A stretch of 63,331 bases of DNA, the filler included, from Octopus bimaculoides (Eukaryota), in the NCBI RefSeq assembly GCF_001194135.2. It is 4 parts of 4 records of this genome, joined end to end, with 100 filler letters (N's around TTAATTAATTAA, not from the genome) between each part and the next. Parts side by side here need not be neighbours in the genome. Positions count along the whole stretch, not along the records: positions 1 to 15,680 come from NC_068998.1; 3 more parts are not named here. One strand, written 5' to 3'. The notes beneath the pieces are model-generated. The model did no database searches. It was not told the DNA's origin and saw only the letters and a list, made by a program, of their open reading frames with translations. Below, piece after piece: positions 2,428-22,372 of this stretch. The first letter of the stretch is position 1. Each line of letters starts with the position of its first letter. The position numbers were made by a program, and so were the translations under genes.

Positions 2428-3200
2428 GTGGATGCTGTTTCGTACTTGCTAGAAAAGGGTGTTATACCCAAAAGAAAATTATGCAAAACGAAGAAGCATT
2501 TTATGAGTACAAAAAACGTGGTGAGAATATGCATTGGCAATGCCCGCACCATGGATGCATGGAGTATGTGTCAGTGGGGAAAAACACATGGTTTGAAGAC
2601 GGAACTCTTCCTCTTAGGACTTTAGTGCTTTTCTTTTACTCAGGGGTTAAAGAATTGACTTCAGTCCCGGTTTTGTGCTGAAGAACTGGGGATGAGCCAT
2701 TGCACAACTGTTGATTATAAATGCTATGTTAGGGAAGTATGTGCGGAGGACCTGCTCCGTCATCCAGTTAAGGTTGGTGGTCCTGGGAAGATTGTTAACA
2801 TCGACGAAACAGTCTTCTCAACCGAGGAAGGGTCCAACCTGAGCAGTGGGTTTTCAGAGGAGCGTGTCTCGAGACCAGACAGGTTTTTTTCTTTGTGCGG
2901 TGCCATGTCGGAATCGTGACACTCTGAAGGAATGCATACGTTCATTCGATTCTTCCAGGAACCACAGTTTTCAGCGATTTATGGAGGGCGTACTCTCACA
3001 TTCCTGAAATTGATTGTTACAATTTTGATAATAGAACAGTGACCCACAGCATTGGGGTTATCTCGAAAGATGGTACCCACACTACTCAACAAGTGAAGAG
3101 TACGTGGACCTCTGTAAAGCAAGGTAATAAAGGACGCTATGGTACTCGACGTTCTATGGTAGATTCATATCTGTGAATTTATGTGGCGCAGGAGATATGA
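2428..3200 (+). mobile_element. Merlin/IS1595(ISXO2)-like DNA transposase pseudogene
   Basis: Frameshifted translation gives KVGGPGKIVNIDETVFS, ILPGTTVFSDLWRAY, TVTHS...GTH-TQQVKSTW and YL-EFMWRRRY, the typical ISXO2/Merlin DDE motifs. TIRs were not confidently found. Confidence 0.85.
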
Positions 3201-4260
3201 AAATTGTGATCTGTTCGAGTAATTGCTCAAATAAATTTCTAACTTTCGTTTTCAATGAACTGTTAGTTTTTTAAAATATTTCATTTGTAATATGCTATTT
3301 TGTTTTTGGATAAATCTTTTAAGTTTGTGCTATAAGTTTCTTGTTTTAGAGAACTATTTAATTTGTAATGTACTATTTATCGCATTACATGCATTATGAA
3401 TGCTTAAAACTACAAAATACGTGTTGTTGTTTACTCGTTTTCTTCTCATCGAGGTGGTTGTAAGGTGTGCTAAAAATAACAAGCTAAATAGGCCTTACCT
3501 CGCGCACCGACACATTTTTTTTCCAGCATAATCGTAAGGATTCCCACCTGTAGAATACAAATTCGCGAAAATTTTCTGAAGATTCCCAAAATGTAAGTTA
3601 TAAGATGTTATATGTCGTACGTAATTCATTTGTTTGTGGTTTCATATAAAAACACACGTGTTATTTTCAGGATGTTGACAAAATGTAGTCCCGCACAAAA
3701 TCCTGTTTCCTGACTGGGTGAAAACTATCAAACTTTACACCTCTATAACTGCAACAGGGATGAGGTGGTGGTGGGGGGGACTGGAACACGGTGTAAAATA
3801 TCAGTTTGTTAGTACATGTGGTTTTTCATTGATAAGACTTCCAGCGCTTGACTTGTTACTATGGAAACAAGCAACTATATGTCTGTGGCTTTTGATCTCC
3901 AAACTTTAAACGCTGTTTAAGCTGTTTATTTATTGATTTATAGTGAAAATGAAATTCGTGTTAATAATCAGCATACAAAACACCAATACACCAAATTTGA
4001 AATCGAAACAAAATTAAAGGAATTGAAAAGCGGAAGCCAAACAGAGATGNNNNNNNNNNNNNNNNNNNNNNNNNNNNNNNNNNNNNNNNNNNNNNNNNNN
4101 NNNNNNNNNNNNNNNNNNNNNNNNNNNNNNNNNNNNNNNNNNNNNNNNNNNNNNNNNNNNNNNNNNNNNNNNNNNNNNNNNNNNNNNNNNNNNNNNNNNN
4201 NNNNNNNNNNNNNNNNNNNNNNNNNNNNNNNNNNNNNNNNNAACTTTTAGTGCCTAGTTC

Positions 4261-4392
4261 GGTATATTGGTTTCAAATTTTGGCACAAGTCCAGCAATTT
4301 TGGGAGATGGGGAGAATTGATTGCATCGACCCCAGTGCTTAACTGGCCCTTATTTTATTGACTGCGGAGGGATTTGCCAGCTCACCGCCTTA
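4261..4392 (-). mobile_element. Degenerate SINE family B copy
   Basis: Reverse complement matches the family B head (aaggcggtgagctggcaaa) and tail (cactggggtcgatgcaatc...cttgtgccaaaatttgaaacc) seen in other copies in this window. Confidence 0.7.
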
Positions 4393-5163
4393 CCTTCTTC
4401 TGTATATTAAATACAAATGCTGCATAATCTTTCATAAAATGAGTTTTAAAACTTCTTTCATTAACAGAAATTTATGCATGCAACACACATACATACATGT
4501 GTCTGTGGACATGTGAAAATCTTTTTTTATTATTCCTATTTCAATAAATAATTGTTTAAATTTTGTATGTGTTTGTGTTATATTTTTAATAATATTTTTA
4601 AAACCATATCTAACTGGTTCAATACTGTTTCGATTTGCAACTGACTCGTTGAAGATATCTAACATGTAAACCTCTTTCTTTGAATGTTTAAACCAACGAT
4701 TCTCAGAACATTTCTTGTCTATGGACCCCTTTGATTACTTTTTCATTCATGCAGACCCCTATTGTCATTTCATATTTGGCATGGCTGTGTTGAGAGAATT
4801 TGCTTTCCAACCACGTGATTTAAGCTGAGTTCAGTCCCAACCAATCGCCCAGGAACAAAATTTGCTTAATGGGTGCAAACTCAGGTCTAAAATATTTTAC
4901 AAACAAGGCTGATTTTTTTTTTTTTCAATCTTAATAGTTTGGTTGAACTTGTATTTAGTTCAAATGGGATCTGAAATGCAGTTAATAGCACCCCGAAGAA
5001 GCTGAAATTAACATCAAAATACATACCAAGACGTAATATTTTACAGTGTGCACTGAGTGGCAGCAGAAACATATGTAGGTGCAGAAATGGAAAGATGTGA
5101 CTGATTGCAGAATAAAACTGGATATATAAATATCTGTTCTCCTTAATTATTAAATTATATCAT

Positions 5164-5537
5164 AGTGGCTGTGTGGTAAGTAGCTTGCTTACCAACCACA
5201 TGGTTCCGGGTTCAGTCCCACTGTGTGACACCTTGGGCAAGTGTCTTCTACTATAGCCTCGGGCCGACCAAAGCCTTGTGAGTGGATTTGGTAGACGGAA
5301 ACTGAAAGAAGCCCGTCGTATATATGTATATATATGTGTGTGTCTGTGTTTGTCCCCCCAACATCGCTTGACAACCGATGCTGGTGTGTTTACGTCCCCG
5401 TAACTTAGCAGTTCGGCAAAAGACAGATAGAACAAGTACTAGGCTTCCAAAGAATAAGTCCTGGGGTCGATTTGCTCGACTAAAGGCGGTGCTCCAGCAT
5501 GGCCGCAGTCAAATGACTGAAACAAGTAAAAGAGTAT
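5164..5537 (+). mobile_element. tRNA-derived SINE family A
   Basis: A-box TGGCTGTGTGG, B-box GGTTCAGTCC, ccttgggcaagtgtctt motif, internal (TA/TG)n and tail ggcggtgctccagcatggccgcagtc. Near-identical to 18852-19245. Confidence 0.9.
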
Positions 5538-8193
5538 NNNNNNNNNNNNNNNNNNNNNNNNNNNNNNNNNNNNNNNNNNNNNNNNNNNNNNNNNNNNNNN
5601 NNNNNNNNNNNNNNNNNNNNNNNNNNNNNNNNNNNNNNNNNNNNNNNNNNNNNNNNNNNNNNACGGACCAGTTGTAGTGCTGAGGTATATTAAACAGATT
5701 ATTTTTATTCCTGAAATTTGCGTTCTTTTACAAAATACAGTTCCTTTACATAATATTAGGGATTGCTCTATTAAGGGCTGAATTGAGATTAAAGAAAATG
5801 AAGGAAATAAATGTAAATATGAAGAAATAACTTGTAATATTTTATATGTGAACTTATTGAACGTATAATATTTAATTGGCTTGTATAGTAATGGGAAGAA
5901 TACAGACCAAATTAACATGAAAAAAAAAAAAAGAAAAATATTGCTGATGGTAACAATACATGGGAGATAATTCTAAAGAAAAACTTGTGAGTGGAGATAA
6001 CTCTAGCCAAGTTTTATTTTACGTTCACTTAATTTCGCGGTTCGGAAAAGAAAATGACCAAATAAAGATAAGTATTAGGGACAATTTCTTTGACTAAATC
6101 ATTCAAAGCGGTGCCTAAGCATGACTGCAGTCCAATGCTTAAAGCAAATAAAAGATAAAACATAACTCTACAGCACACAGCACGCGTCCAAGGATGAATC
6201 GTTGCGAAGAACGGAATGGATATAAGAAAGGGACGTATCTATCTTTACAGATTCCCCCACTCCCTCATCGCCACAGAACCAAGGAAACGGACTGAAAGAC
6301 TGACAGAGACGATTGTAAGGTAGTCAAAACGGATCGCATTTATAAAGACAATATAACGTCAAGACACAAGTCTTGAAATTTTGGGGAGGAGGCTTGTGTG
6401 TGTGTGTGTATCTGAGTCAGCTCCGTCGCGTGACTTCAAGAGTCCCCCTGCAACTTTTTGTCGTGAGGCCTCATCCCTTCAATCAAAATTCATAATCTAC
6501 GCACCTTTTATTCATAGATAAATTTTACTTTATTCTATCTGAAGTTCAATATTTCACGTTATCCTAAAGAACATCTTTAGAAGTACAAGTTAAATTTATT
6601 TAGGTCTATGGCAAATTCCAGTAAGTAAAATTTCCAGGTATGAATAAAAGTGCACTTTCGTAATCCAGGTAACTTTCAAAAACAAACACGGTGCACTTTT
6701 TGCTTCGCGAAATCATTGATCAGCTCAGAATAATCAAGCTGAGAGCTAAGTTCATGTTCAATAGATGTCAGAGACAATCCACAAAGCCTGGTACACGTTC
6801 GTGGTACACGTTCGTGGTACACTGTAATATTTTTACGAGAACTTTTGCAGGTTCAATGTGTTACCATTTTATTGCTTGAAATTTTCAGTTAACATTGATA
6901 GTTCAATTCTTGTTCAGTAACTTAACCAAAGTAAATAGATGACTCATCTACGTACTTTGATCTTAACATGGGGCCCTTCAAACGCATAGGCTCCCTGTGC
7001 AGGGGTTGCAAGGGCTTAGCGACGGCCCCGATCTGTGTATATATTATGTATACGTATGTGTGTATATATGACTGTTTATGCGTGAGTGTTTGTTATTATT
7101 GGCGAGTAATAATAATTCTCATATTATTATAGTCATCGGAATATGGTTGATCTACAAATCGTTCTTGTTATCTATTAGGCTGACCTCCTCATCAGCTTAA
7201 GCCTATTCCAACGAACAAAATAAATAATAATACCACCACCAACAGCAACAAAAATATCATCATCATTGATAACAACAACGATAGTGGATCTTGCATGCAT
7301 GAAGTGGATTCGATCCACCATAGCCAAATTTAAATTAACACTGCAACATAACTTTTCCCACGGTGGAACAATGGTTTTTCTCTGACAGCAGTTTTACATT
7401 TTCCAGATGCTAGGCCAAAATAATGTCTTCACCACTTGACCCTTTCTAACCTCTTCTACTCCACCAAAAGCTAGAATAGAGATAACAAGACCACCAACTA
7501 AATCTATTGTTCTCAATGATATGTCTATCCTTCTGGATAGTTACAAAAACAAGAAACCTCAAGCAAAAACCAAGTAGTCACTTGGCGACTACGGAGCAAG
7601 GCGGCTCGTGACGACTCAATTAGTTAGGGAACGAACTGCTATAATCATGATCACAAGACTACTAAGACAATGGTCAGTGTGAGAAATGCAATTTACTGTC
7701 AGCAACTGTGAGACAACGTCCCACAACCCTACAACTTTCACTAGCTCTAATTCTGTTCTCTTACAACATCATTCTATCGCTATCTGTGGATTACTACTAA
7801 CAATTCGTATACGCCAAACTATGCAAAGAAACATTCTACCACATCTTTCTTTCGCATGCTCTCGGATGTTATAACCTGCCCGTCGAGGTATGGTATTTTT
7901 CAACGTAATGGTGAATAAATACTTTCTTAAAACTCCATGCCTTGTTCATCTTTCACATCCTACAACATGCCGTTATAACAACAACAAAATTTTATCGACA
8001 CAACTGCTGACTCCAACATTTCATAATATTGTTTACAAAACGAAACTTAACCGTTACAATTGATAACTCTGAACAAGAGAATTGCAGCCTTCTCAAAACA
8101 TACGTATGCACTTACGTTTACATGTATATACGCCTGTGTATACACGTATGTGTGTGTACACGTTCGCGTGTATGTGTATATATGTATGCATGC

Positions 8194-8226
<33 letters not shown>

Positions 8227-8444
8227 TGTATGTATGTATGTATTCCTAAATGACAATCAAATATGATAAGGAGAAGACTTGACTGATATGAACCAAAAGG
8301 GCTGAGGTGGTTCAGATGGAGAACTTTAATCTTGTTTTGTAAAAAGAAAATATTAATAGATAAATAGAATTATTAGTTCAATTCAAATCTGACAAGGAAG
8401 TGGAAACAAGGATTATGATAGATAAATTAATTAATCAAATTAAA

Positions 8445-8800
8445 AGGCGTGGGTGTGGTTGTGGTTGTGTAGTAAGAAGCTTGCTTCCCAACCACATGGT
8501 TTCAGGTTCAGTCCAACTGCATAGTACTTTGGGGCACATGTCTTCTACTATAACTTCGGATAGACCAAAATCTTGTGAGTGGATTTGGTAGACAGAAACT
8601 GACAGAAGCCGGTTGTATATATGCATGTGTATATATATATATATATATTTATTTACCAGACAACAAATGGAAATTATGACATACATGTGTTTATATATAT
8701 ATAAATAAGTACCGGGGTGGTTTCATTTAACTAAAAATTTTTGAAGGCGGTGCCCCAGCATGGCCACAGTCTAATGACTGAAAGAAGTATAAGATAAAGA
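8445..8800 (+). mobile_element. SINE family A, diverged copy
   Basis: Head, gtgagtggatttggtagacagaaact body and ggcggtgccccagcatggccacagt tail align to the other family A copies. Confidence 0.8.
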
Positions 8801-9065
8801 TTATGTACTGCTGAATGAAAAGAAGGCAGTCTGAGAGAGAGAGAGAGAAAGGCAGAGGTAGAGAGAGAGAGAGAGAGAGAATAAGGTCTAAGACCAATGG
8901 ATTCAAGACATGTACCAGTCATGAAGTTGATGATAGCATGGTTGCAAGTACATTTAAATATATGAAGTTAGAGAATGCTGTTGGTCCATCAGGGTCGTGC
9001 CAGGGCAAGTGATACTAGGACAACTCATATCAGATCACTCATACCTGGACAACTGATATCTAGGA

Positions 9066-9220
9066 CAGGGGCAGACAGAGTATTATGGGCCCTCAGGCAT
9101 AACTGTTCACTGGGCTCCTTAGCATTGATATCAAAGAGAGTTAACATGAAGAGTGCGGGCCTCCCAGAGCTCCGGACATTTGGGCAGTGCCTGGTTGATA
9201 GATGGCTCGCTCTGCCCTTG
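9066..9220. mobile_element. 155-bp hAT-type MITE
   Basis: TIRs CAGGGGCAGA / TCTGCCCTTG (9/10 match), flanked by a perfect 8-bp TSD ATCTAGGA (9058-9065 and 9221-9228). An 8-bp TSD is characteristic of hAT. Confidence 0.85.
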
Positions 9221-9529
9221 ATCTAGGACAACTGATATATAGGACAACTCATTACAGGTGATAAAGTGATAAAGATTTAATTATGAAAGAAAAGCTCAAT
9301 AAAACAACCGCACACACACACACACACCACACATACACACATCACACACACACACACACCTATACACCACACACACACACGCACGCACACACACACACAA
9401 ATACATACCACACACACATCACACACATGCACACATGCGCATCTGCAAACACCCCCCCACACACACACACGCACTACACACATTTCAGGCCTTGTGCCAA
9501 GAGTAGAAAAGAATATTATCAAGTAAGTG

Positions 9530-9860
9530 AAGGTGCGTTGTTTAGTGGTTAAGGTATTCAGCTCAGGATCTTCACGTCATGAGTTCAATTCCCAGCAGGT
9601 TGTTGTGTCCTTGAGCAAGACACTTTATTTCACATTGCTCCAGTCCACACAGTTGGCAACCTGTGTTGGTGTATTTACATCCCTGTAACATAGTGGTTGG
9701 GCACAAGAGGCCAATGGAATAAGTAGAAGGCTCAAAATAAAAATAAAAATAAAAAAGTGCTGGGGGTTGATTCGTACAGCTAAAAGTTCCTCAAGGCAGT
9801 GCACCAGCATGGCCGCAGTCTAATGATTGAAACAAGTAAAAAAAATAGAAGATAAAATAA
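9530..9860 (+). mobile_element. tRNA-derived SINE family C (shares 3' tail with family A)
   Basis: tttagtggttaagg A-box, gagttcaattccc B-box, gtgtccttgagcaagacacttt motif and ggcagtgcaccagcatggccgcagtc tail. Confidence 0.8.
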
Positions 9861-10045
9861 ACATAATTATACAGAGAAGATAAAAAGAAAACGAAAATTG
9901 AAATAATCTTGGAAAAGATAATTTGTTAAGTAATGTATGTGTAGGTGTGTGTCTGTGTGTGTGTATGTATATATATTTATATTTATATTTATATATATAT
10001 GTATGTAGATATACATATATATATATATTTATATGTCTGTAGTTA

Positions 10046-10080
<35 letters not shown>

Positions 10081-10204
10081 NNNNNNNNNNNNNNNNNNNN
10101 NNNNNNNNNNNNNNNNNNNNNNNNNNNNNNNNNNNNNNNNNNNNNNNNNNNNNNNNNNNNNNNNNNNNNNNNNNNNNNNNNNNNNNNNNNNNNNNNNNNN
10201 NNNN

Positions 10205-10249
<45 letters not shown>

Positions 10250-10875
10250 GTGTGTGTCCATACATATATATACATATACACACATATATATATACATTAT
10301 ATATATATATACATACATATATATGTATATGTGTGTGTGCGTGCGTGTGTGCGTGCATGTGTGTGTGTGAACATCGTGTAAAACAACTAAAGATAAAATG
10401 CGATAATATAACTTTTTTTTTAATCTGCAACTCAAGCCCATGTGAGAAATATCCCATCTGTCACCTGTAAATCTCTATAAATGCTACAAAAATTGTAATT
10501 TTGTTACCTATTGTGTCTTCCTCTTACTGAAACCAAGGTGAGTGCCTATTTGTTGTTGTTTTTGTTGTTGTCAAGCCATTTTTCGCCCTTGAAGTACAGA
10601 TCACCGATCGCAAGAATCCTGTTTTGTTTGTTTGTTATTTTTTCCTTTTTTTTCTTTAGGTCAAGTGTACACTTAGACTGTTTTATATCCGATGTGTTCT
10701 TTCTTTAAAACAGTATATGTGTAGGTTGAGTGAGATTGGCTGCTATTTCTGGCAGTTTGATCAACTAGACACAACCTTGCTTCCCAACATGAGATCTTCA
10801 GATCACTCGGGATCCACACAAAATAAATAAATAAACAAAATTACTGGGTGCGTCGGTGAAATGAGTGATGGCATA

Positions 10876-11045
10876 TGGCACGTAGCCTAGTGGTTAAGGT
10901 GTTGCACTTGTGATTGTAAGATTGTAGTTTTGATTCCAGGATGGGAGAATGCATTGTGTTCATGAGCTAAACATTTCACGTAAAGCTGCTTCTGTCCACT
11001 CAGATGGAAATGCAAAATCCTTCGATGGACCGGTGTCCTGTTTAG
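10876..11045 (+). mobile_element. Degenerate tRNA-headed SINE
   Basis: tagcctagtggttaagg A-box, degenerate B-box (gttttgattcc) and ctgtccactcag central motif resembling family C. Confidence 0.6.
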
Positions 11046-11619
11046 CATGAGTGTTGTGATCTCAGTCACTTATGCTCCATGGAAACTGAGTATTCCACCT
11101 ATTCAATCTTTGGGCTCAAGACAGGTAGAACTGCAGAACTGTGAACTAAATCCTAAAATCTGGGGCCCGTGACAAAATGATTTCATCAAAAGGGGTCTTT
11201 GGTAAAGATAAGGTTGAGAAACATGACCATGCACATAGAGGTTCTGTCCCCAGTTTACTCTTGTAGTCTGTTGTGAGTAAAGTGGAGAATGGAATGATAG
11301 TTGAGCTGAACAACAGGGGGCGATGTTTAAAGTTTTTACATGTTTCGGAAATTAACTCCACCTTACACCTTTTTATATTACATTCCCTTTGGCATTCACT
11401 TCAAATTTATGTGGACCTGGCTTTGACTTACACTTACCTCCCATTGCTTCGTACTTTGGTCAAGTGTTTTCAGCAATAGCTTCGCATCAACTCAACTCAA
11501 ACCCGTTTTTTAGTAAAACGGAACAGACAGAAATTATGCGGAAGGCCATCGAATAAATCTTTACCTGTTCTTTGGGCAAAAAATTTAAAAGCTGGTTGGC
11601 TGTTTTGATCCACTGGAGA

Positions 11620-11725
11620 TAGATTTAATCAGCTTTGGATGGTAGATTTAATGCCCTGAGAAAGATTAAATTCACCGGGATAGATTTACTCAGCCGAATA
11701 GTAGATTTAATATGTTGTAGATTTT
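11620..11725. promoter_or_regulatory. Homotypic cluster of TAGATTTA motifs upstream of the peptide gene
   Basis: Exact TAGATTTA at 11620, 11643, 11681 and 11702, variants at 11662 and 11718, and a further copy at 12080. A regulatory function is inferred only. Confidence 0.4.
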
Positions 11726-11902
11726 AAACCCAATATTCACATGCTATTATTTATAGTGTTATGTGATGTGCTTCAAGAACGAATTAGCCAATAAAGAATT
11801 ATTTCATGTTCTCTTGAAAGTTTATAAAATTCTTACAATATGGAAATATGCAGTTCTTGCTGGTAAGAATAAAGCTTCTAGAATGGGTAGGAAAATTCAA
11901 AG

Positions 11903-11972
11903 GAATGTTTTGGTCCAATGGTAGAACACCTGTCATGTCTACAAGAGGTGTGGGTTTGAGTCCTACAGGCCT
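11903..11972 (+). pseudogene. tRNA-like relic (tRNA pseudogene or solitary SINE head)
   Basis: A-box TGGTCCAATGG, ACACC/GGTGT stem and B-box-like GGTTTGAGTCC. The anticodon loop is non-canonical. Confidence 0.4.
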
Positions 11973-12684
11973 TTAACTTATTCTATCCGAAGTGGTTTTT
12001 TGACATTATTAACATGCTGTTATTTATAACTTCGTGTGATGTGCTTTGAGAACCAATGATCCTGAAAAAGAATCGATGGTAGATTTAAACCATGCATGGG
12101 AAATTCAATTAAGTTTGCTTGGGCACTTCACGCAGTCAATTTTAAGGACACACTGATAACAGAGTAAACCAGATGATGTAAAACAAATGCAAATAGGTCA
12201 GTATTTGTTGTATTCCTGTTATTTGTTCTAAACTGTGCACATACAGCATTTAACATTGACTGAACATTTACTTTTAGATATTGGTTAAATTTTATAAATA
12301 CATTTTTTTCTTGTTGCCTTATGATTAGTTGCTGAAAACAGGCTAAAGTTGTGAAAGCAGTCCAAAAAGTTCAGATGCAATTAATGGTGTAGCTAGAGTG
12401 TGTACTGCCCGGGATAGCCCTCAAGTTTACTGCTCCCATCCCCAGCTAACACTGCCTGTTCACACTTATACAATAGACTCAAAATTGTCATTCCTTAAAT
12501 GAGTTGTTTGAAGCAAGCTGTCCCCATAGCTGTCCCCCCATTTAGCTTTGCTACTTGACTCAATGGGAATACAACAATAAAACTGAGAAGTTCCAAGAAA
12601 GTAAGCAACTTGTTATTCAATTATAATATATTTTTGATTTATCAGTAACTTAATCTAAATCTTATATCTATATAGGCCGCAGTC

Positions 12685-12778
12685 ATGAAGCTTGCTCTCG
12701 TTCTATTGGTTTTGTTGCCATTGGCACTGTCTGCCTCTTTAGGAGAAAGTGAAAGTGAAACTGCAAAGAGGAGTTTAA
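12685..12778 (+). CDS. Coding exon 1 of predicted secreted Cys-rich peptide precursor (signal peptide, acidic propeptide, KR)
   Basis: Translates MKLALVLLVLLPLALSASLGESESETAKRSL and ends at a perfect donor A|GTAAGT (12779-12784, phase 1). Upstream AG acceptors at 12674-12675 or 12681-12682. Confidence 0.8.
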
Positions 12779-12799
12779 GTAAGTCAAATCTACTTTTAC

Positions 12800-12993
12800 T
12801 ACTGCTACTGCTGCTGCTGCTACCACCCCACCCCACTATCACCACCACCACCACCACCACAGCCGCCACCACCACCACCACCTCCACCACCACTACCACT
12901 ACCGCTGCTGCTACTGCTGTTTGCTGCTGTTGCAACACTACTACTACTGCTGCTGCTGCTGCATCATTACTACTACTACTACTACTACTACTA
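12800..12993. repeat. Compound trinucleotide microsatellite (CTG/CAC/CTA) in intron 1
   Basis: Direct reading; runs into an N gap. Confidence 0.95.
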
Positions 12994-13406
12994 NNNNNNN
13001 NNNNNNNNNNNNNNNNNNNNNNNNNNNNNNNNNNNNNNNNNNNNNNNNNNNNNNNNNNNNNNNNNNNNNNNNNNNNNNNNNNNNNNNNNNNNNNNNNNNN
13101 NNNNNNNNNNNNNNNNNNNNNNNNNNNNNNNNNNNNNNNNNNNNNNNNNNNNNNNNNNNNNNNNNNNNNNNNNNNNNNNNNNNNNNNNNNNNNNNNNNNN
13201 NNNNNNNNNNNNNNNNNNNNNNNNNNNNNNNNNNNNNNNNNNNNNNNNNNNNNNNNNNNNNNNNNNNNNNNNNNNNNNNNNNNNNNNNNNNNNNNNNNNN
13301 NNNNNNNNNNNNNNNNNNNNNNNNNNNNNNNNNNNNNNNNNNNNNNNNNNNNNNNNNNNNNNNNNNNNNNNNNNNNNNNNNNNNNNNNNNNNNNNNNNNN
13401 NNNNNN

Positions 13407-13750
13407 AGCAAATCGACCCCAGGACTTATTCTTTAGAAACCTAATACTTATTCTATTGGTCTCTTTTGCCGAACCGCTAAGTTACGGGGACATAAACACA
13501 CCAGCATCGGTTGTCAAGCGATGTTGAGGGGACAAACACAGACACACAAACACATACACACATACATATATATATATACACATATACGACGGGCTTCTTT
13601 CAGTTTCCATCTACCAAATCCACTCACAAGGCTTTGGTCGGCCCAAGGCTATAGTAGAAGACACTTGCCCAAGATACCACACAGTGGGACTGAACCCAGG
13701 ACCATGTGGTTGGTAAGCAAGCTACTTACCACACAGCCACTCCTACGCCT
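13407..13750 (-). mobile_element. SINE family A (antisense, intron 1)
   Basis: Reverse complement of the family A consensus from the head (aggcgtaggagtggctgtgtgg) to the gap. Confidence 0.9.
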
Positions 13751-14011
13751 AATTATTATTCAACCTTCTCTTTTTCGTTCATCTTTTTGCGAGAGTGGAA
13801 TCAGCTTCTATATTCCTTCTCTGTCTGAAGAAAGATAACTATATGAAATGTGGGGGTTTTTTCATTCCCTAACACAAGTCAACTCACTGTACTTTACTTT
13901 AACTTTTAGCTACAAATGCTTATTGATGAATTTTTTTTCCAACAGACGTTTGTGTTGTTTTCTGTTTTTTTGTTTTTTTAAATTTTTTTCTCTCTCTTTC
14001 TTCTTTTGCAG

Positions 14012-14126
14012 TTGATTTAGTTATTCATCATCTTCATAGTCTAGATTTATCAAAGGGATGTGTTAAAGCTTGTGAAGAAAATGTTGCTGGAATTGGTGAA
14101 TTCTTTTGTGAAGCTGCCTGCAAAAT
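14012..14126 (+). CDS. Coding exon 2 of predicted peptide precursor (His-rich helix plus CX3C-X11-CX3C)
   Basis: Long polypyrimidine tract and TTGCAG acceptor. Phase-1 join gives IDLVIHHLHSLDLSKGCVKACEENVAGIGEFFCEAACK with no stop. Donor AT|GTACGT; alternative donor TAC|GTCAGT at 14130/14131. Confidence 0.75.
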
Positions 14127-14184
14127 GTACGTCAGTTTACTTACATAACAAGAAGCAAACAACTCTTAATATTATTATTATCAC

Positions 14185-14645
14185 AAGACAGCAAGCTGGC
14201 AGAAACGTTAGCACGCCGGGCGAAATGCTTAGCAATATTTCGTCTGAGTTCAAATTCTGCCGAGGTCGACTTTGCCTTTCATCCTTTCGGGGTCGATTAA
14301 ATAAGTACCAGTTACACACAGGGGTTGATATAATCGACTTAATCCATTTGTCTGTCCTTGTTTGTTCCCTCTGTGTGTAGCCCCTTGTGGGTGGTAAAGA
14401 AATAAGAAACGTTAGCATGCTGGGCGAAATGCTTGGCAGTATTTTGTCTGTCTTTATGTTCTGAGTTCAAATTCTGCTGAGGTTAACTTTGCCTTTCATC
14501 CTTTCGGGGTTGATAAATTAACTACCAGTTGCATACTGGAGTCGATCTAATCGACTAGCACCCTCCCCAAAAATTTCAGCCCTTGTGCCTAGAGTAGAAA
14601 AGAATATTATTATTATCACTATTATTATCATTATTATTATTATTA

Positions 14646-14676
<31 letters not shown>

Positions 14677-15350
14677 CATTATTATTATTATTATTATTAT
14701 CATTATTATCATTAAGAAGGTGGCAAGCTGGCTGAATCATTAGCACACTGGACAAAATGTTCTGCAGCATTTTGTCTGTCTTTACATTTTGAGTTCAAAT
14801 TCTGTCGAGGTCGACTTTGCCTTTCATTCTTTTGGGGTTGATAAAATGAGTACCAGTGAAACAATGGGGTCAATATGATCAACTAGTCCCTTCTCACCAA
14901 ATTTTTGTCTGTCTTTATGTTCTGAGTTCAATTTCTGCCGAAGTCGACTTTGTCTTTCATCCTTTTATGGTCGATAAAATAAGTACCAATTATGTACTGG
15001 GGGTCAATGTAATTTACTATACCCCTCCCTCAAAATTCAGGCCTTGTTCCTATAGTAGAAAGGATTAAACTTACACCCTCCCCCAAAATTGCTGGTCTTG
15101 TGCCAAAATTTGAAGCCATAATTACTATTATTAAGGCAGTGGTCTGGCAGGCTCATTTGCATACTGGATAAAACGTTTTGAGGCATCCCATCCATTCATA
15201 ATGCCTTGAGTTCAAATTTCACTGAGGTCGAATTTGCTTTTCGTCTTTTCATGGTTGATAAAATAAGTACCAGTGAAACACTGGGGGTCAATGTAATCAT
15301 CTTACCTTCTTCCCTCAAATTGCTGGCCTTGTGCCAAAAGTTGAAATCAA
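14185..15350 (+). mobile_element. Tandem pile-up of about 5 SINE family B copies (intron 2)
   Basis: Repeated gagttcaaattc...gaggtcgactttgcctttcatcc...aagtaccag blocks at about 14185, 14407, 14716, 14905 and 15133, with an (ATT)n tract at about 14605-14712. Confidence 0.9.
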
Positions 15351-15412
15351 TATGTGTTTGAGCTGTAAGTAATTTTGAAACTGGTCAATATAATTTCTTT
15401 CTTTTTCTTTAG

Positions 15413-15449
15413 CCTCTTACAAAGCACTCACTCTACTGCAAGTCCTTGA
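15413..15449 (+). CDS. Coding exon 3 (terminal) of predicted peptide precursor
   Basis: tttctttctttttctttAG acceptor. Phase-2 join gives (I)LLQSTHSTASP-stop; the phase-0 alternative gives PLTKHSLYCKSLKEDTANG-stop at 15472. AATAAA follows about 110 nt downstream. Confidence 0.6.
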
Positions 15450-15560
15450 AAGAAGACACAGCAAATGGATGATTTGGTCATCAGTTACTTCTTGACAAAG
15501 AAAATGGTGGAAATAATAGAAACACCAAAACTGTTTCCACAAAATGCTTCTTCAAGTTTG

Positions 15561-15570
15561 AATAAATAAA
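15561..15570 (+). promoter_or_regulatory. Polyadenylation signal (overlapping AATAAA x2)
   Basis: aataaataaa downstream of the exon 3 stop codon. Confidence 0.55.
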
Positions 15571-15724
15571 CAATTTTTCAAAAATTAATGACTCATTTCG
15601 TGCTTTGTTTTATTTATTTGTTTACGACAAGAATCATCATCATCATCATCATCGTTTAACGTCTGCTTTCCATGCTAGCANNNNNNNNNNNNNNNNNNNN
15701 NNNNNNNNNNNNNNNNNNNNNNNN

Positions 15725-19245: not shown

Positions 19246-19706
19246 CAAGTAAGTGTGAAAACAAGAATTCTTTTCTCACATAAACACAAACGTCAATTAA
19301 TTTCATTGGCGATTAATACTGTATCTTATACAGGGCACCGAATAAAAAAACTTTTATCTCTTCACAGTAACAACCGCAGAAGAAAAGAAAAAGAGAATAA
19401 CGTTGTCTTGTCCCGAACCTTTCCAAACATTCGTCAGGGAAACGCCGTCTCCCCCAAAACAAATCATAAAGAAATGAAACAATTACAGTCCGCCCTTACT
19501 GATCGTTGTTGTTATTGTGTTCTTAACATGTGCACTTCAGTGAAACGATGTAACGTGAAACTAATTATGCTACAGGTTCAACGATATAGACTAGAATGAC
19601 GTTCCTACAGAATATTTCAAGTAACAAAACAAAACAAAAAAAAAAGAATCACACAACTTTTAAATAAAGACTCAAAGCATATTTTACGTTGGGTTTAATT
19701 TTAGGC

Positions 19707-19828
19707 ACCCCCAAGGCGATGAAGGGCAAAGTCTATCTCCACGAAATTTGAACTCAGAACGCAAAGACGGATGAATTATCGCTAGCTCTTCATCCTGCAA
19801 GCTAACAATTCTACCATCTCGCCGCCTT
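19707..19828 (-). mobile_element. SINE family B (partial, head-to-head with next copy)
   Basis: Reverse complement gives aaggcggcgagatggtagaattgttagc...ctgagttcaaatttc. Confidence 0.8.
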
Positions 19829-19859
19829 CGGATCATTAGTTGCTATTAAACATTGAAAT

Positions 19860-20078
19860 AAGGCGGCGAGCTAGCAGAACCGTTAGCACGCCGGGTTAAA
19901 TACTTTGTAGTATTTCATCCGACTATGTTCTGAGTTCAAACACCACCGTGGTCGACTTTGCCTTTCATCCCTTCGGGGCCGATAAAATAAGATCCAGTTG
20001 AACACTGGGGTCGATGTAATCGACTTAGCCCCTCCTTCGAACTTGCCGGCTTTGTACCAAAATTTGAAATCAATATTA
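19860..20078 (+). mobile_element. SINE family B
   Basis: aaggcggcgagctagcagaaccgttagc...gtaccaaaatttgaaatc. Confidence 0.9.
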
Positions 20079-20210
20079 ACCATTGAAATAGATGTGTTTT
20101 ACAGCCATTAAAAGAAGATTAATAACAACTGCAAAATGATGATTATTTACTTCAAAAACGTCTTACATTTGTGATGAATATTTTTTTCTTCTGCATCATT
20201 TCTTGCAGCA

Positions 20211-20675
20211 GGGTACACCAGGCACATGCATCACAACTATATGTGCGCTACGTGGTGATCTCATATCAAAGTAAACAAAGCATGACTTTGCAGGTGGGAT
20301 CCAGTTAGAATTTTCTTCAGGTCGCGTGGCCCATCCCGCCTAAAAGGTCCCTGAATAAAGTTTGTTTGAGGCTAGTGAACGAAACACCCATGCTCCCAGA
20401 GGTAAATTATTAAAAACCCCAAAAATTATTCTCAACACATGGCTATGATGCTCCCCACTACTTCTGCTCGTGATCAGAGATGCACATATCGTCAGCCACT
20501 AAGGGACATGATCAACTGGTTAAGGTCAAGCAACTGACAAGCAAATCTGTGGTATTGAGTAGAATATTTGCTGTAGCCCATCTTTCACACCAAGACAAAA
20601 CATGTACACGATAGCACTCCCAATCAGTTAATATCAGAAGCCATGAGAGCCACTGCCTGGTATTGCATCAGGGTA
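20211..20675 (+). repeat. Interspersed repeat family F (second copy at 55952-56269)
   Basis: 20211-20440 aligns closely with 56041-56269 (gggtacaccagg...ctcaacacat). Confidence 0.85.
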
Positions 20676-20747
20676 TGATACTGCATCAGGGCATAGTACT
20701 ACACCAGAGCATGGTACTGTATCAGGGCATGGAACTAGATCAGGGCA
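20658..20747 (+). repeat. 18-bp minisatellite, 5 units (consensus tggtactgcatcagggca)
   Basis: Units start at 20658, 20676, 20694, 20712 and 20730. Confidence 0.9.
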
Positions 20748-21026
20748 TGGTGCTGCATGGCAGCTGTCAAATAACTGAAACAAGTAAAAGAATAAAAGAA
20801 TAGTGTATCTAGAACTACAAGGTGAAGTATATCCTTTCCTTTGGTTAGATTGTGATTTGAGGGAGATTTAGATGTTATTTCTAGCATACTAACCGACAAC
20901 ATCGAAACCGTCAAGTAGGTCTGAGGTGGATGACCAGATATGAACAAATCTTTCCAGTCATGACTACCTCTTATTTTTATACATATTTCATTATTGCTCA
21001 CAGGGGTCCAAAGATAGCGGGGACGA

Positions 21027-21287
21027 ACAAGGACAGATAAAGGGATTAAGTCGATCATATCGACCCCAGTGCGTAACTCGGTACCAAAAGCACTACATAA
21101 AACATAAATGAAAAGTGGTGCCCATCAATTCAGAAGGATCCCGTAACTGGTACTTATTTAATCGACCCCGAAAGGATGAAAGGCAAAGTCGACCGCGGCG
21201 GAATTTGAACTCAAAACGTAACGGCAGACGAAATACCGCTAAGCATTTCGCCCGGCGTGCTAACGGTTCTGCCAGCTCGTCGCCCTT
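21027..21287 (-). mobile_element. SINE family B with a 57-bp insertion
   Basis: Family B consensus on the minus strand, interrupted at 21085-21141. Confidence 0.9.
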
Positions 21288-22372
21288 CCTAATTTTACGT
21301 AACGACACCGACACCACCCAATCTGTCCCTTTACTTTTAAGGCAGGGTAATGTGATTTGAGGAAGATTTAACTACTATCTTTAGTAGATTAGCAATCGTG
21401 TTAGAGATTATCACGTTCGCAGGTCCATAAATAAGTTGNNNNNNNNNNNNNNNNNNNNNNNNNNNNNNNNNNNNNNNNNNNNNNNNNNNNNNNNNNNNNN
21501 NNNNNNNNNNNNNNNNNNNNNNNNNNNNNNNNNNNNNNNNNNNNNNNNNNNNNNNNNNNNNNNNNNNNNNNNNNNNNNNNNNNNNNNNNNNNNNNNNNNN
21601 NNNNNNNNNNNNNNNNNNNNNNNNNNNNNNNNNNNNNNNNNNNNNNNNNNNNNNNNNNNNNNNNNNNNNNNNNNNNNNNNNNNNNNNNNNNNNNNNNNNN
21701 NNNNNNNNNNNNNNNNNNNNNNNNNNNNNNNNNNNNNNNNNNNNNNNNNNNNNNNNNNNNNNNNNNNNNNNNNNNNNNNNNNNNNNNNNNNNNNNNNNNN
21801 NNNNNNNNNNNNNNNNNNNNNNNNNNNNNNNNNNNNNNNNNNNNNNNNNNNNNNNNNNNNNNNNNNNNNNNNNNNNNNNNNNNNNNNNNNNNNNNNNNNN
21901 NNNNNNNNNNNNNNNNNNNNNNNNNNNNNNNNNNNNNNNNNNNNNNNNNNNNNNNNNNNNNNNNNNNNNNNNNNNNNNNNNNNNNNNNNNNNNNNNNNNN
22001 NNNNNNNNNNNNNNNNNNNNNNNNNNNNNNNNNNNNNNNNNNNNNNNNNNNNNNNNNNNNNNNNNNNNNNNNNNNNNNNNNNNNNNNNNNNNNNNNNNNN
22101 NNNNNNNNNNNNNNNNNNNNNNNNNNNNNNNNNNNNNNNNNNNNNNNNNNNNNNNNNNNNNNNNNNNNNNNNNNNNNNNNNNNNNNNNNNNNNNNNNNNN
22201 NNNNNNNNNNNNNNNNNNNNNNNNNNNNNNNNNNNNNNNNNNNNNNNNNNNNNNNNNNNNNNNNNNNNNNNNNNNNNNNNNNNNNNNNNNNNNNNNNNNN
22301 NNNNNNNNNNNNNNNNNNNNNNNNNNNNNNNNNNNNNNNNNNNNNNNNNNNNNNNNNNNNNNNNNNNNNNNN

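What the first reader, a model, noticed from the sequence alone, without database searches (positions are those of the whole stretch)
12676..15570. Hidden three-exon gene for a secreted CX3C-X11-CX3C (helix-loop-helix toxin/AMP-like) peptide
Seen: splicing 12685-12778 + 14012-14126 + 15413-15449 at canonical GT-AG sites gives an intact 81-aa ORF: MKLALVLLVLLPLALSA-SLGESESETA-KR-SLIDLVIHHLHSLDLSKG-CVKAC-EENVAGIGEFF-CEAAC-KILLQSTHSTASP, followed by AATAAA. The ORF track misses it because exon 1 runs on into a microsatellite. Established: signal peptide, acidic propeptide and dibasic site is the standard toxin/AMP/neuropeptide precursor layout. CX3C-Xn-CX3C defines disulfide-stapled helical hairpins (scorpion kappa-KTx/Om-toxins, plant alpha-hairpinins). 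From memory, Conus framework XIV peptides vil14a/flf14a have the same X11 spacing; this needs verifying. Inference: an unannotated cephalopod venom-gland, skin or neuroendocrine peptide.
Basis: partly seen in the sequence, partly recalled or inferred. Interest (0 to 1): 0.9.

Follow-up and report, generated by a model that had tools for sequence, protein, structure and literature searches.

The report
Octopus secreted twin-CX3C peptide gene
This is a real, evolutionarily conserved Octopus bimaculoides gene for a small secreted, disulfide-stapled helical peptide; it is already in the databases as an "uncharacterized protein", belongs to an undescribed family shared by octopods and bivalves, and looks more like an endogenous signalling peptide than a venom toxin or antimicrobial peptide.

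Summary
Splicing 12685-12778 + 14012-14126 + 15413-15449 at GT-AG sites gives the 81-aa ORF as written, with AATAAA 112 nt past the stop.

The gene is not hidden. The protein is 100% identical to UniProt A0A0L8GWF6 (O. bimaculoides, "Uncharacterized protein").

The assembly gap lies inside intron 1. The gapless O. vulgaris ortholog has the same exon order and orientation, so continuity is supported and frame across the gap does not matter.

The gene is real:
- Orthologs exist in O. vulgaris and Argonauta hians.
- Against Argonauta, synonymous sites are saturated (pS 0.84) while the mature core barely changes (pN 0.08).
- At least 7 O. bimaculoides paralogs and many bivalve homologs share a signal peptide, an acidic spacer, a KR site and CX3C-X10-12-CX3C.
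- Both coding introns sit at the same alignment columns and phases in Ostrea edulis.

No Pfam family, PDB relative or paper covers the family.

The vil14a 3/11/3 spacing is verified (PDB 6EFE). Beyond the cysteines, R-superfamily conotoxins score no better than shuffles.

The mature peptides are anionic and more conserved than the pre-pro region, and many relatives end in Gly or Gly-Lys. I favour an endogenous processed secreted peptide over a toxin or AMP. Function is inferred, not shown.

The parts
12670..12684 (+). Probable 3' splice acceptor (atatAG| at 12670-12675) followed by 9 nt of 5'UTR (12676-12684) before the ATG. This implies an upstream non-coding exon outside or in a gap of the window.
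   Evidence: An AG acceptor-like site lies 2-20 nt upstream of the ATG in all 8 family loci inspected. The O. vulgaris model CAI9736015.1 splices two upstream exons (L002 10001-10036 and 23287-23334) onto exactly this site. This is an inference; no transcript for this gene was seen.
12685..12778 (+). Coding exon 1 (94 nt, ends in phase 1). It holds the signal peptide aa 1-17/18 (MKLALVLLVLLPLALSA), the acidic spacer SLGESESETA, the dibasic site K28-R29 (12766-12771), and then S30-L31.
   Evidence: It is 90% identical at protein level in O. vulgaris and conserved in Argonauta. M1, K2, L8 and P12 are invariant and R29 nearly invariant in the 19-member alignment. The signal peptide is judged from the sequence only; no SignalP was available.
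12779..14011 (+). Intron 1 (GTAAGT...TTTTGCAG). It contains (ACC)n/(ACT)n microsatellites at 12796-12993, the assembly gap at 12994-13406, and a SINE-like interspersed repeat at about 13407-13751.
   Evidence: The O. vulgaris intron is 843 nt and gapless. The element after the gap recurs at window 5160-5435 and 8435-8686.
14012..14126 (+). Coding exon 2 (115 nt, phase 1 in, phase 2 out), aa 32-70. It encodes the conserved N-terminal helix IDLVIHHLHSLDLS and the CX3C-X11-CX3C core (Cys codons 14059-61, 14071-73, 14107-09, 14119-21).
   Evidence: It is 82% aa identical to Argonauta. The core has pN 0.08 against pS 0.84. All four Cys and A67 are invariant in 19 and 26 family members. It is the only long unique Octopus-Argonauta DNA match in the locus. 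It does not overlap any repeat.
14127..15412 (+). Intron 2 (GTACGT...TTCTTTAG). It holds five copies of a SINE-like repeat of about 100-170 nt (14189-15297) and a (TAT)n microsatellite (14605-14714).
15413..15449 (+). Coding exon 3: completes I70, then LLQSTHSTASP and the stop TGA (15447-15449).
   Evidence: Argonauta has IILQNTDTTAQP* with the stop at the same position. O. vulgaris has ILLKSTHATANPI*.
15450..15570 (+). 3' UTR ending in overlapping AATAAA poly(A) signals (15561-15570).
   Evidence: The TTTGAATAAA motif sits about 105-115 nt after the stop in O. bimaculoides, O. vulgaris and Argonauta.

Best explanation
The locus is a genuine Octopus bimaculoides gene that is already annotated as UniProt A0A0L8GWF6, 'Uncharacterized protein'. 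It has three coding exons and probably an upstream non-coding exon. It encodes an 81-aa prepropeptide of an undescribed family of small secreted proteins found in octopods and bivalves. Proposed mechanism, as inference: the N-terminal signal peptide directs the protein into the ER and is removed near A17/S18. A proprotein convertase cuts after the conserved K28-R29 and removes the short acidic spacer. This releases a 52-residue anionic peptide made of an N-terminal helix plus a helix-turn-helix. The two CX3C motifs would staple that hairpin with two disulfides (C48-C68 and C52-C64, by analogy with CS-alpha/alpha peptides). I think the product is most likely an endogenous secreted signalling or regulatory peptide (neuropeptide, hormone or cytokine-like), not a venom toxin or a membrane-active antimicrobial peptide. 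Shown: the gene model, its conservation, the family, the purifying selection, and the predicted helices. Inferred: the cleavage sites, the disulfide pairing, secretion and function. Sub-confidences: about 0.93 that this is a real conserved secreted-peptide gene, and about 0.45 that it acts as an endogenous signalling peptide.
For: Gene model: exact ORF and GT-AG sites; 100% identity to A0A0L8GWF6.

Orthologs and contiguity: orthologs in O. vulgaris (gapless and collinear) and in Argonauta, with the same junctions and stop.

Selection: for O. bimaculoides against Argonauta, the core has pN 0.08 and pS 0.84, while the signal and pro region has pN 0.25. The B paralog shows the same pattern, pN 0.157 against 0.32.

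Family: profile searches find at least 7 O. bimaculoides paralogs. They also find hits in O. vulgaris, Argonauta, oysters, pearl oysters, unionids and Solemya, at E values from 1e-5 to 1e-37. The four Cys are invariant and the KR/RR/KK site is present in 26 of the 27 tabulated.

Gene structure: Ostrea edulis genes have introns at the same alignment columns and in the same phases, 1 and 2.

Expression of relatives: a polyadenylated, spliced cDNA of a family member exists in a public RNA-seq assembly (L004). An oyster member is differentially expressed in larvae (PMC9498863).

Structure: the AF2 model of the mature peptide has mean pLDDT 85.4 with helices at 2-10, 19-26 and 29-48. The Cys positions are symmetric about the turn: 19+39 = 23+35.

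Signalling-like features: net charge is -3. Of the 27 relatives, 11 end in Gly or Gly-Lys, which are amidation signals. The mature region is more conserved than the pre-pro region. The family occurs in non-venomous filter feeders.
Against: No transcript, peptide or tissue data for this gene were accessible. No Logan contig carries this exact product, and the collection lists it only from UniRef/MetaClust, not NCBI. The window's own peptide lacks a C-terminal amidation signal. The family is expanded to at least 7 copies in Octopus, which is more typical of defence, venom or pheromone families than of classical neuropeptides. The family does not appear in an oyster visceral-ganglia regulatory-peptide survey (PMC8398477, text and 2 supplements). 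The Argonauta B paralog has DR and Pinctada has ER in place of KR. Disulfide pairing and signal-peptide cleavage were not computed. Foldseek found no significant structural match.
Confidence: 0.55

Rival explanations
1. It is a salivary or venom toxin, a cephalopod counterpart or homolog of the R-superfamily (framework XIV) conotoxins such as vil14a, acting weakly on K+ channels or another prey target.
For: It has the same Cys framework and loop class, 3/11/3, as vil14a and all listed R-superfamily peptides, and it comes from the same phylum. A helix-turn-helix is predicted. The gene family is expanded in a venomous predator. A 2026 review says R-superfamily toxins have unexplored relatives in non-venomous molluscs (PMC13311285).
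Against: hhalign probability is only 3-5%. R-superfamily peptides score no better against the family core HMM than Cys-preserving shuffles. The mature domain is under strong purifying selection and is more conserved than the signal and pro region. Orthologous families exist in filter-feeding bivalves with conserved introns. A conserved 17-residue N-terminal stretch, mostly helical, precedes the hairpin and is absent from the 27-aa conotoxins.
Confidence: 0.13
2. It is a host-defence (antimicrobial) peptide of the alpha-hairpinin type, made by hemocytes or epithelia.
For: It has the layout of signal peptide, anionic propeptide and KR, then a disulfide-stapled helical hairpin, which matches plant alpha-hairpinin AMPs in Cys motif (PMC7191063). 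The gene is multi-copy, with tandem pairs in Ostrea and convergent pairs in octopods.
Against: The predicted mature peptides are anionic (net -1 to -4 in 24 of the 27 tabulated; only the two Solemya members are cationic). The mature region is strongly conserved rather than diversifying. No similarity to any known AMP family was found in Pfam or PDB.
Confidence: 0.1
3. It is another kind of extracellular protein, for example a water-borne pheromone or chemical cue, or a mucus, egg-coat or shell-matrix component.
For: It is a small, secreted, helical, disulfide-bonded and acidic protein in a lineage-expanded family. An oyster member responds to acidification in calcifying larvae (PMC9498863). 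A Pinctada member exists.
Against: The dibasic site is conserved and C-terminal Gly or Gly-Lys is frequent, which points to regulated-secretory-pathway processing. There is no direct evidence for any of these roles.
Confidence: 0.18
4. It is not a functional gene but a chance spliced ORF, an annotation artefact, or a product of mis-scaffolding across the gap.
For: The exons are short. A 413-N gap and microsatellites sit in intron 1. No transcript of this exact gene was retrieved.
Against: The exons, splice sites, phases and stop are conserved in three octopod genomes and, for introns and phases, in an oyster. Synonymous sites are saturated while pN is 0.08. The O. vulgaris locus is gapless and collinear.
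Confidence: 0.03

Closest known systems
UniProt A0A0L8GWF6_OCTBM and its unnamed family. Members include O. bimaculoides A0A0L8FGZ6, GV66, GWF1, GV61, GVL7 and LOC106874479; O. vulgaris CAI9736015.1 and CAI9726847.1; Argonauta hians GAB1599521.1 and GAB1605707.1; and oyster, pearl-oyster, unionid and Solemya 'uncharacterized proteins'.
   Same: The window's product is identical to A0A0L8GWF6. All members share the signal peptide (MK...L..P), a short acidic spacer, a basic cleavage site, an N-terminal helix, CX3C-X10-12-CX3C with an invariant Ala before the last Cys, and two coding introns of phase 1 and phase 2.
   Different: Nothing differs in kind. The window gene is the 'A' paralog: it has an H-rich helix, a longer C-terminal tail ending STASP, and no terminal Gly. 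The family has no name, no Pfam model, and no publication that I could find.
R-superfamily conotoxins (framework XIV: vil14a, PDB 6EFE; VilXIVB/C, Vil14.9-12, flf14a-c, as14a; teretoxin Tan14.1)
   Same: They are molluscan secreted peptides with four Cys in loop class 3/11/3. [quoted passage not shown] The loop Gly falls in register in the hhalign alignment.
   Different: No sequence similarity beyond the Cys framework was detectable here. The conotoxins are 27 aa and lack the conserved N-terminal helix and the C-terminal tail. They are venom-duct products.
Scorpion kappa-KTx / kappa-hefutoxins and plant alpha-hairpinins (CS-alpha/alpha peptides)
   Same: They share the CX3C...CX3C motif on two antiparallel helices.
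   Different: They come from unrelated lineages and are regarded as convergent scaffolds. The only PDB sequence hit was kappa-KTx 2.9 at E = 4.8, which is not significant. Loop lengths, charge and precursor organisation all differ.
Small Tim proteins (twin CX3C, Pfam zf-Tim10_DDP)
   Same: They have a twin CX3C helical hairpin with an inter-motif spacing of 11-16 residues (from general knowledge).
   Different: They are mitochondrial intermembrane-space proteins without an ER signal peptide. No Pfam match was found. The window protein has a classical N-terminal signal peptide.

Membership tests
Unnamed molluscan secreted twin-CX3C peptide family (A0A0L8GWF6 cluster) | Significant full-length sequence similarity to other members | tested here: met
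   Profile searches gave E values from 1e-14 to 1e-37 for octopod paralogs and from 1e-5 to 1e-18 for bivalve members.
Unnamed molluscan secreted twin-CX3C peptide family (A0A0L8GWF6 cluster) | Shared gene structure: phase-1 intron shortly after the basic site, and phase-2 intron in the second codon after the last Cys | tested here: met
   This holds for the window, O. vulgaris and Argonauta A and B genes, and Ostrea edulis L005.
Conotoxin R-superfamily (framework XIV) | Cys framework C-C-C-C with loop class 3/11/3 | tested here: met
   The window has CVKAC-X11-CEAAC. vil14a was verified as 3/11/3, and so were the other R peptides.
Conotoxin R-superfamily (framework XIV) | Mature-peptide sequence similarity beyond the cysteines | tested here: not met
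   hhalign probability was 4.7% and 2.6%. Scores against the family core HMM were within the distribution of Cys-fixed shuffles, with 17-75% of shuffles scoring at least as high as the real peptide.
Conotoxin R-superfamily (framework XIV) | Conserved superfamily signal sequence, which is the defining criterion for conotoxin gene superfamilies | not testable with these tools
   The precursor sequences (Moller et al. 2018, Peptides 107:75) are not held in the library. No Conus or Lottia protein was returned by the three profile searches.
Conotoxin R-superfamily (framework XIV) | Expression in a venom duct or gland | not testable with these tools
   No expression data were accessible for this gene.
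CS-alpha/alpha (helical hairpin) structural class | Two antiparallel helices each carrying one CX3C | tested here: met
   In the AF2 model of the mature peptide (mean pLDDT 85.4; block means 89-92 over residues 1-40), helices 19-26 and 29-48 carry C19/C23 and C35/C39. This is a prediction only.
CS-alpha/alpha (helical hairpin) structural class | Disulfide connectivity C1-C4 and C2-C3 | not testable with these tools
The pairing is inferred from the symmetry of the Cys positions about the turn. Foldseek against PDB returned nothing significant.
Neuropeptide / peptide-hormone precursors (general class) | Signal peptide plus a conserved basic convertase site flanking the conserved peptide | tested here: met
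   The window has MKLALVLLVLLPLALSA and K28-R29. KR, RR or KK is present in 26 of the 27 tabulated members, and R29 is nearly invariant. Cleavage itself was not shown.
Neuropeptide / peptide-hormone precursors (general class) | C-terminal amidation signal (Gly or Gly-Lys/Arg) | tested here: not met
   The window peptide ends in ...STASP. In contrast, 11 of 27 relatives, including the adjacent B paralog (…EQTG) and most oyster members (…LNG/…NGK), do have the signal.
Neuropeptide / peptide-hormone precursors (general class) | Expression in neurons or endocrine cells, and a cognate receptor | not testable with these tools
   No data were available. The family is absent from the oyster visceral-ganglia peptide lists.
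Small Tim (zf-Tim10_DDP) twin-CX3C proteins | Pfam PF02953 match and no ER signal peptide | tested here: not met
   No Pfam hit at E <= 10. An N-terminal hydrophobic signal peptide is present.
Pfam PF02950 Conotoxin (O-superfamily) | Match above the gathering threshold | tested here: not met
   Only 1 of 19 members matched, at E = 0.19. This may be the origin of the UniRef name 'Conotoxin' on the oyster protein A0A8W8L1V4.

The most novel reading that the evidence does not exclude
This family is the 'still-unrecognized molluscan' endogenous peptide that a 2026 review (PMC13311285, sec. 2.6.3) postulates as the ancestor of the R-superfamily helix-loop-helix conotoxins (vil14a and relatives). 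On this reading it is an ancient signalling peptide with two disulfides and three helices. It would have been present in the common ancestor of bivalves and cephalopods, would have an unknown receptor, and would have been recruited into cone-snail venom by trimming to the CX3C hairpin.
Probability: 0.2. Interest if true: 0.7.

Novelty: new member of a known kind. Interest (0 to 1): 0.45.

Why it matters
The locus itself is not a discovery, because the gene model already sits in UniProt. What the follow-up adds is context. The protein belongs to a coherent family with no name, no Pfam model and no literature that I could find. The family spans octopods and at least five bivalve lineages. Its intron positions and phases are conserved and its mature peptide is under strong purifying selection. 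This gives a concrete candidate set for a new molluscan secreted signalling peptide. It also makes one open question directly testable: whether the CS-alpha/alpha R-superfamily conotoxins derive from an endogenous molluscan peptide or are convergent. Finally, the work flags three mis-annotated public models whose errors hide the signal peptide or half of the cysteine motif.

Tried and rejected
(1) Pfam and NCBIfam scans of the protein and 19 relatives gave nothing significant.

(2) PDB sequence searches with three profiles returned only non-significant hits: AC54 at E = 0.14 and kappa-KTx 2.9 at E = 4.8.

(3) Foldseek of the confident mature-peptide model against PDB returned one hit at E = 9.5. 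Peptides this short are poorly served by Foldseek. The first AF2 run, on the full precursor with 6 sequences, was poor (pLDDT 58.5) and was not used.

(4) Homology to R-superfamily conotoxins: hhalign and an HMM-against-shuffle test were both negative beyond the Cys framework. Precursor sequences could not be obtained.

(5) Exact-product look-up of the window protein in public assemblies and Logan found nothing on record, so there is no direct transcript evidence.

(6) Literature searches by accession, LOC id and peptide strings found no description of the family. Only one differential-expression table entry for an oyster member turned up.

(7) P0010, a 1759-aa repeat protein that scored E = 5.6e-18 in the representative search, was rejected as a false positive. 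Its score is the sum of 14 weak repeats and it has no family features.

(8) The internal donor used by the Argonauta annotation (GGAATTG|GT within exon 2) was considered as an alternative model. It was rejected because the exon-3 frame it reads is not conserved between species by my manual comparison, whereas the full exon 2 with Cys3 and Cys4 is conserved in all paralogs.

(9) The TATA-like tatatctatatag at 12662-12675 was considered as a promoter. It is too close to the ATG, since a start site about 30 nt downstream would fall inside the CDS. It fits better as a splice acceptor.

(10) Upstream ORFs at 2428-3007 had no Pfam hit.


Full report
OBSERVATION

I read 12500-15680 and joined the three proposed exons.
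- The donors are TTTAA|GTAAGT and AAAAT|GTACGT.
- The acceptors are TTTTGCAG| and TTCTTTAG|, each behind a pyrimidine tract.
- Exon 1 ends in phase 1 and exon 2 in phase 2.
- Two overlapping AATAAA signals lie at 15561-15570.
- Unspliced, exon 1 runs into an (ACC)n/(ACT)n microsatellite and the N gap, giving a meaningless 280-aa ORF. This explains why a plain ORF list misses the gene.

ASSEMBLY GAP

The gap (12994-13406) lies wholly within intron 1, so reading frame across it does not matter. Only the order and orientation of the two flanks matter. The orthologous O. vulgaris locus (L002, chromosome OX597831.1) contains no N. It is collinear with the window from about 700 to 15623. This includes both sides of the gap: window 12394-12857 matches L002 40671-41132, and 13752-14339 matches 41637-42217. 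Its exon 1 and exon 2 are 843 nt apart on one strand. The extra length in the window is the microsatellite plus a SINE-like insertion (about 13407-13751) that recurs elsewhere in the window. Continuity is therefore supported.

NOT HIDDEN

The protein is 100% identical over 100% of its length to UniProt A0A0L8GWF6_OCTBM, 'Uncharacterized protein', Octopus bimaculoides. This identifies the organism and shows that the model is already annotated. Its 90% cluster also holds O. vulgaris CAI9736015.1. Argonauta hians GAB1599521.1 is a 69% match.

A REAL GENE

All three exons are found in O. vulgaris, with protein identity of 90% for exon 1 and 88% for exon 2.

In Argonauta the annotated protein uses an internal donor and loses Cys3 and Cys4. 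The genome nevertheless carries the full exon 2, the same donor (AAAAT|GTACGT), and an exon 3 that ends at the same stop. Together these give an 80-aa ortholog.

A Nei-Gojobori count for O. bimaculoides against Argonauta gives the following:

| Region | pS | pN |
|---|---|---|
| Mature core (codons 30-69) | 0.84 | 0.08 |
| Signal and pro region | 0.75 | 0.25 |

At this distance the only long unique DNA matches in the locus are exon 1 and exon 2. Everything else is microsatellite or SINE. Exons 2 and 3 do not overlap the five SINE-like copies or the (TAT)n array of intron 2.

THE FAMILY

Three profile searches were run. Two used the 5.8-billion-protein collection. One was a full HMMER scan of 1.84 billion representatives. 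With name look-ups, they show a family of short 'uncharacterized' proteins:
- At least seven in O. bimaculoides: A0A0L8GWF6, FGZ6, GV66, GWF1, GV61, GVL7 and LOC106874479.
- Several in O. vulgaris and Argonauta.
- Many in bivalves: Magallana/Crassostrea, Saccostrea, Ostrea, Pinctada, Potamilus, Sinanodonta and Solemya.

In a 19-member alignment, M1, K2, L8, P12, the four Cys and A67 are invariant, and R29 is nearly so.

The loop class is 3/11/3 in cephalopods and oysters, 3/10/3 in unionids and 3/12/3 in Solemya.

Ostrea edulis has a tandem pair (L005). Its introns fall at the same alignment columns and in the same phases (1 and 2) as in octopus. The three-coding-exon structure therefore predates the split between bivalves and cephalopods.

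In O. vulgaris the B paralog lies about 12 kb downstream on the opposite strand. The same convergent arrangement, about 8 kb apart, is seen in Argonauta.

A polyadenylated cDNA of a family member, with both coding introns removed, exists in a Logan RNA-seq assembly (L004, SRR25158133, species unknown). An oyster member is in a larval differential-expression table (PMC9498863).

No gastropod member was found.

KNOWN FAMILIES

Pfam and NCBIfam gave nothing. PF02950 'Conotoxin' touched one member at E = 0.19, which may explain the UniRef name 'Conotoxin' on one oyster entry. PDB sequence searches and Foldseek gave nothing significant. No paper in the library carries the accessions, LOC ids or peptide strings.

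STRUCTURE

AlphaFold2 on the mature peptide with a 26-sequence alignment gives mean pLDDT 85.4 and pTM 0.63. It predicts helices at 2-10, 19-26 and 29-48. The Cys positions are C19/C23 and C35/C39, symmetric about the turn. This is consistent with a CS-alpha/alpha hairpin preceded by an extra conserved helix. The disulfide geometry could not be checked.

CONOTOXIN LEAD

vil14a (PDB 6EFE) is GGLGRCIYNCMNSGGGLSFIQCKTMCY, which is 3/11/3, and all listed R-superfamily peptides share that loop class (PMC9897318).

A 2026 review notes that R-superfamily toxins resemble an uncharacterized Lottia protein and other molluscan sequences. It calls the presumed endogenous peptide 'still-unrecognized' (PMC13311285).

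I tested the link directly. hhalign puts the four Cys and the loop Gly in register, but at only 3-5% probability. Seven R peptides score no better against the family core HMM than shuffles that keep the Cys fixed. Only the framework is shared.

FUNCTION (INFERENCE)

Four features argue against a venom toxin or a cationic AMP:
- The mature peptide is anionic (-3), and 24 of the 27 tabulated members are net -1 to -4.
- The mature domain is the most constrained part of the precursor in both the A and B genes.
- The basic cleavage site is nearly universal, and 11 of 27 members end in Gly or Gly-Lys.
- The family is present in non-venomous filter feeders.

These fit an endogenous, convertase-processed secreted peptide.

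Against that reading: the gene is multi-copy, this paralog has no amidation signal, the family is absent from an oyster ganglion peptide survey, and there are no expression data for this gene.

My estimates are about 0.93 that this is a real conserved secreted-peptide gene and about 0.45 that it acts as a signalling peptide.

GENE STRUCTURE CAVEAT

All eight loci inspected have an acceptor-like AG 2-20 nt upstream of the ATG. The O. vulgaris model splices two far-upstream exons onto that site. The gene therefore probably has one or more 5' non-coding exons. The orthologous position of the nearer one would fall around the window gap at 4050-4241.

VERDICT

The locus is an ordinary, already-annotated gene. 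The family it belongs to is uncharacterised and moderately interesting.

Noticed in passing
L001 11560-11674 and 12167-12203 (Argonauta hians BAAFZT010000008.1): The public Argonauta model GAB1599521.1 (103 aa) uses an internal donor in exon 2 and reads exon 3 in another frame, so it loses Cys3 and Cys4. The conserved junctions give an 80-aa ortholog that ends at the same stop as the octopus protein.
   Followed up: yes
L002 10001-10036, 23287-23334, 40951 (O. vulgaris OX597831.1); window 12670-12684: The O. vulgaris model CAI9736015.1 (115 aa) adds a 33-aa N-terminal extension from two far-upstream exons, which buries the signal peptide. Similar extensions occur in A0A0L8GV66, LOC106874479 and several oyster models. 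All loci have an AG acceptor just upstream of the ATG, which suggests a conserved 5'UTR intron and mis-called start codons.
   Followed up: partly
L003 10001-14256 (O. vulgaris) and L001 minus strand 19678-21429 (Argonauta): A second family member, the 'B' paralog (ends ...EQTG in both Octopus species), lies 8-12 kb downstream of the A gene on the opposite strand in both O. vulgaris and Argonauta. This is a conserved convergent gene pair. The window ends before the corresponding position.
   Followed up: partly
L005 10001-12919 and 16940-19651 (Ostrea edulis OX387709.1): A tandem pair of oyster family members lies on the same strand, 7 kb apart. Both end in ...SSLNG, a C-terminal Gly amidation signal.
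   Followed up: partly
P0039-P0041 (Crassostrea virginica LOC111127623 / LOC111125810): Oyster isoforms differ in carrying 2, 3 or 4 tandem copies of an SPPDISKR propeptide unit, each ending in KR, ahead of the conserved peptide.
   Followed up: no
window 11904-11974 (+): Rfam tRNA model hit just above the gathering score (30.5 against 29 bits). ARAGORN reports no tRNA. It is probably a tRNA-derived repeat or pseudogene about 700 nt upstream of the gene.
   Followed up: no
window 5160-5435, 8435-8686, 13407-13751; 14189-15297; 15624-15680: At least two SINE-like interspersed repeat families, plus many microsatellites, fill the introns and flanks. The (CAT)n-CGTTTAACGTCTGCTTTCCATGC element at the window's end also occurs many times in the Argonauta locus.
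   Followed up: partly
window 2428-3007 (+): Several short ORFs in shifting frames (for example ...VGGPGKIVNIDETVF...) look like a decayed coding sequence. From memory it resembles a transposase-like gene, but there was no Pfam hit at E <= 1.
   Followed up: partly
L004 1-910 (Logan SRR25158133 contig): The poly(A)+ cDNA of a family member carries 910 nt upstream of the ATG, ending in ...tttttcag|ccATG. This looks like a retained 5'UTR intron even though both coding introns are spliced out. The species of the run is unknown.
   Followed up: no
profile searches: No gastropod protein was recovered, not even from Lottia, Aplysia or Conus, although bivalves and cephalopods bracket gastropods in most molluscan phylogenies. 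The cause could be loss, strong divergence (possibly towards the R-superfamily-like sequences), or the limits of the searches.
   Followed up: no
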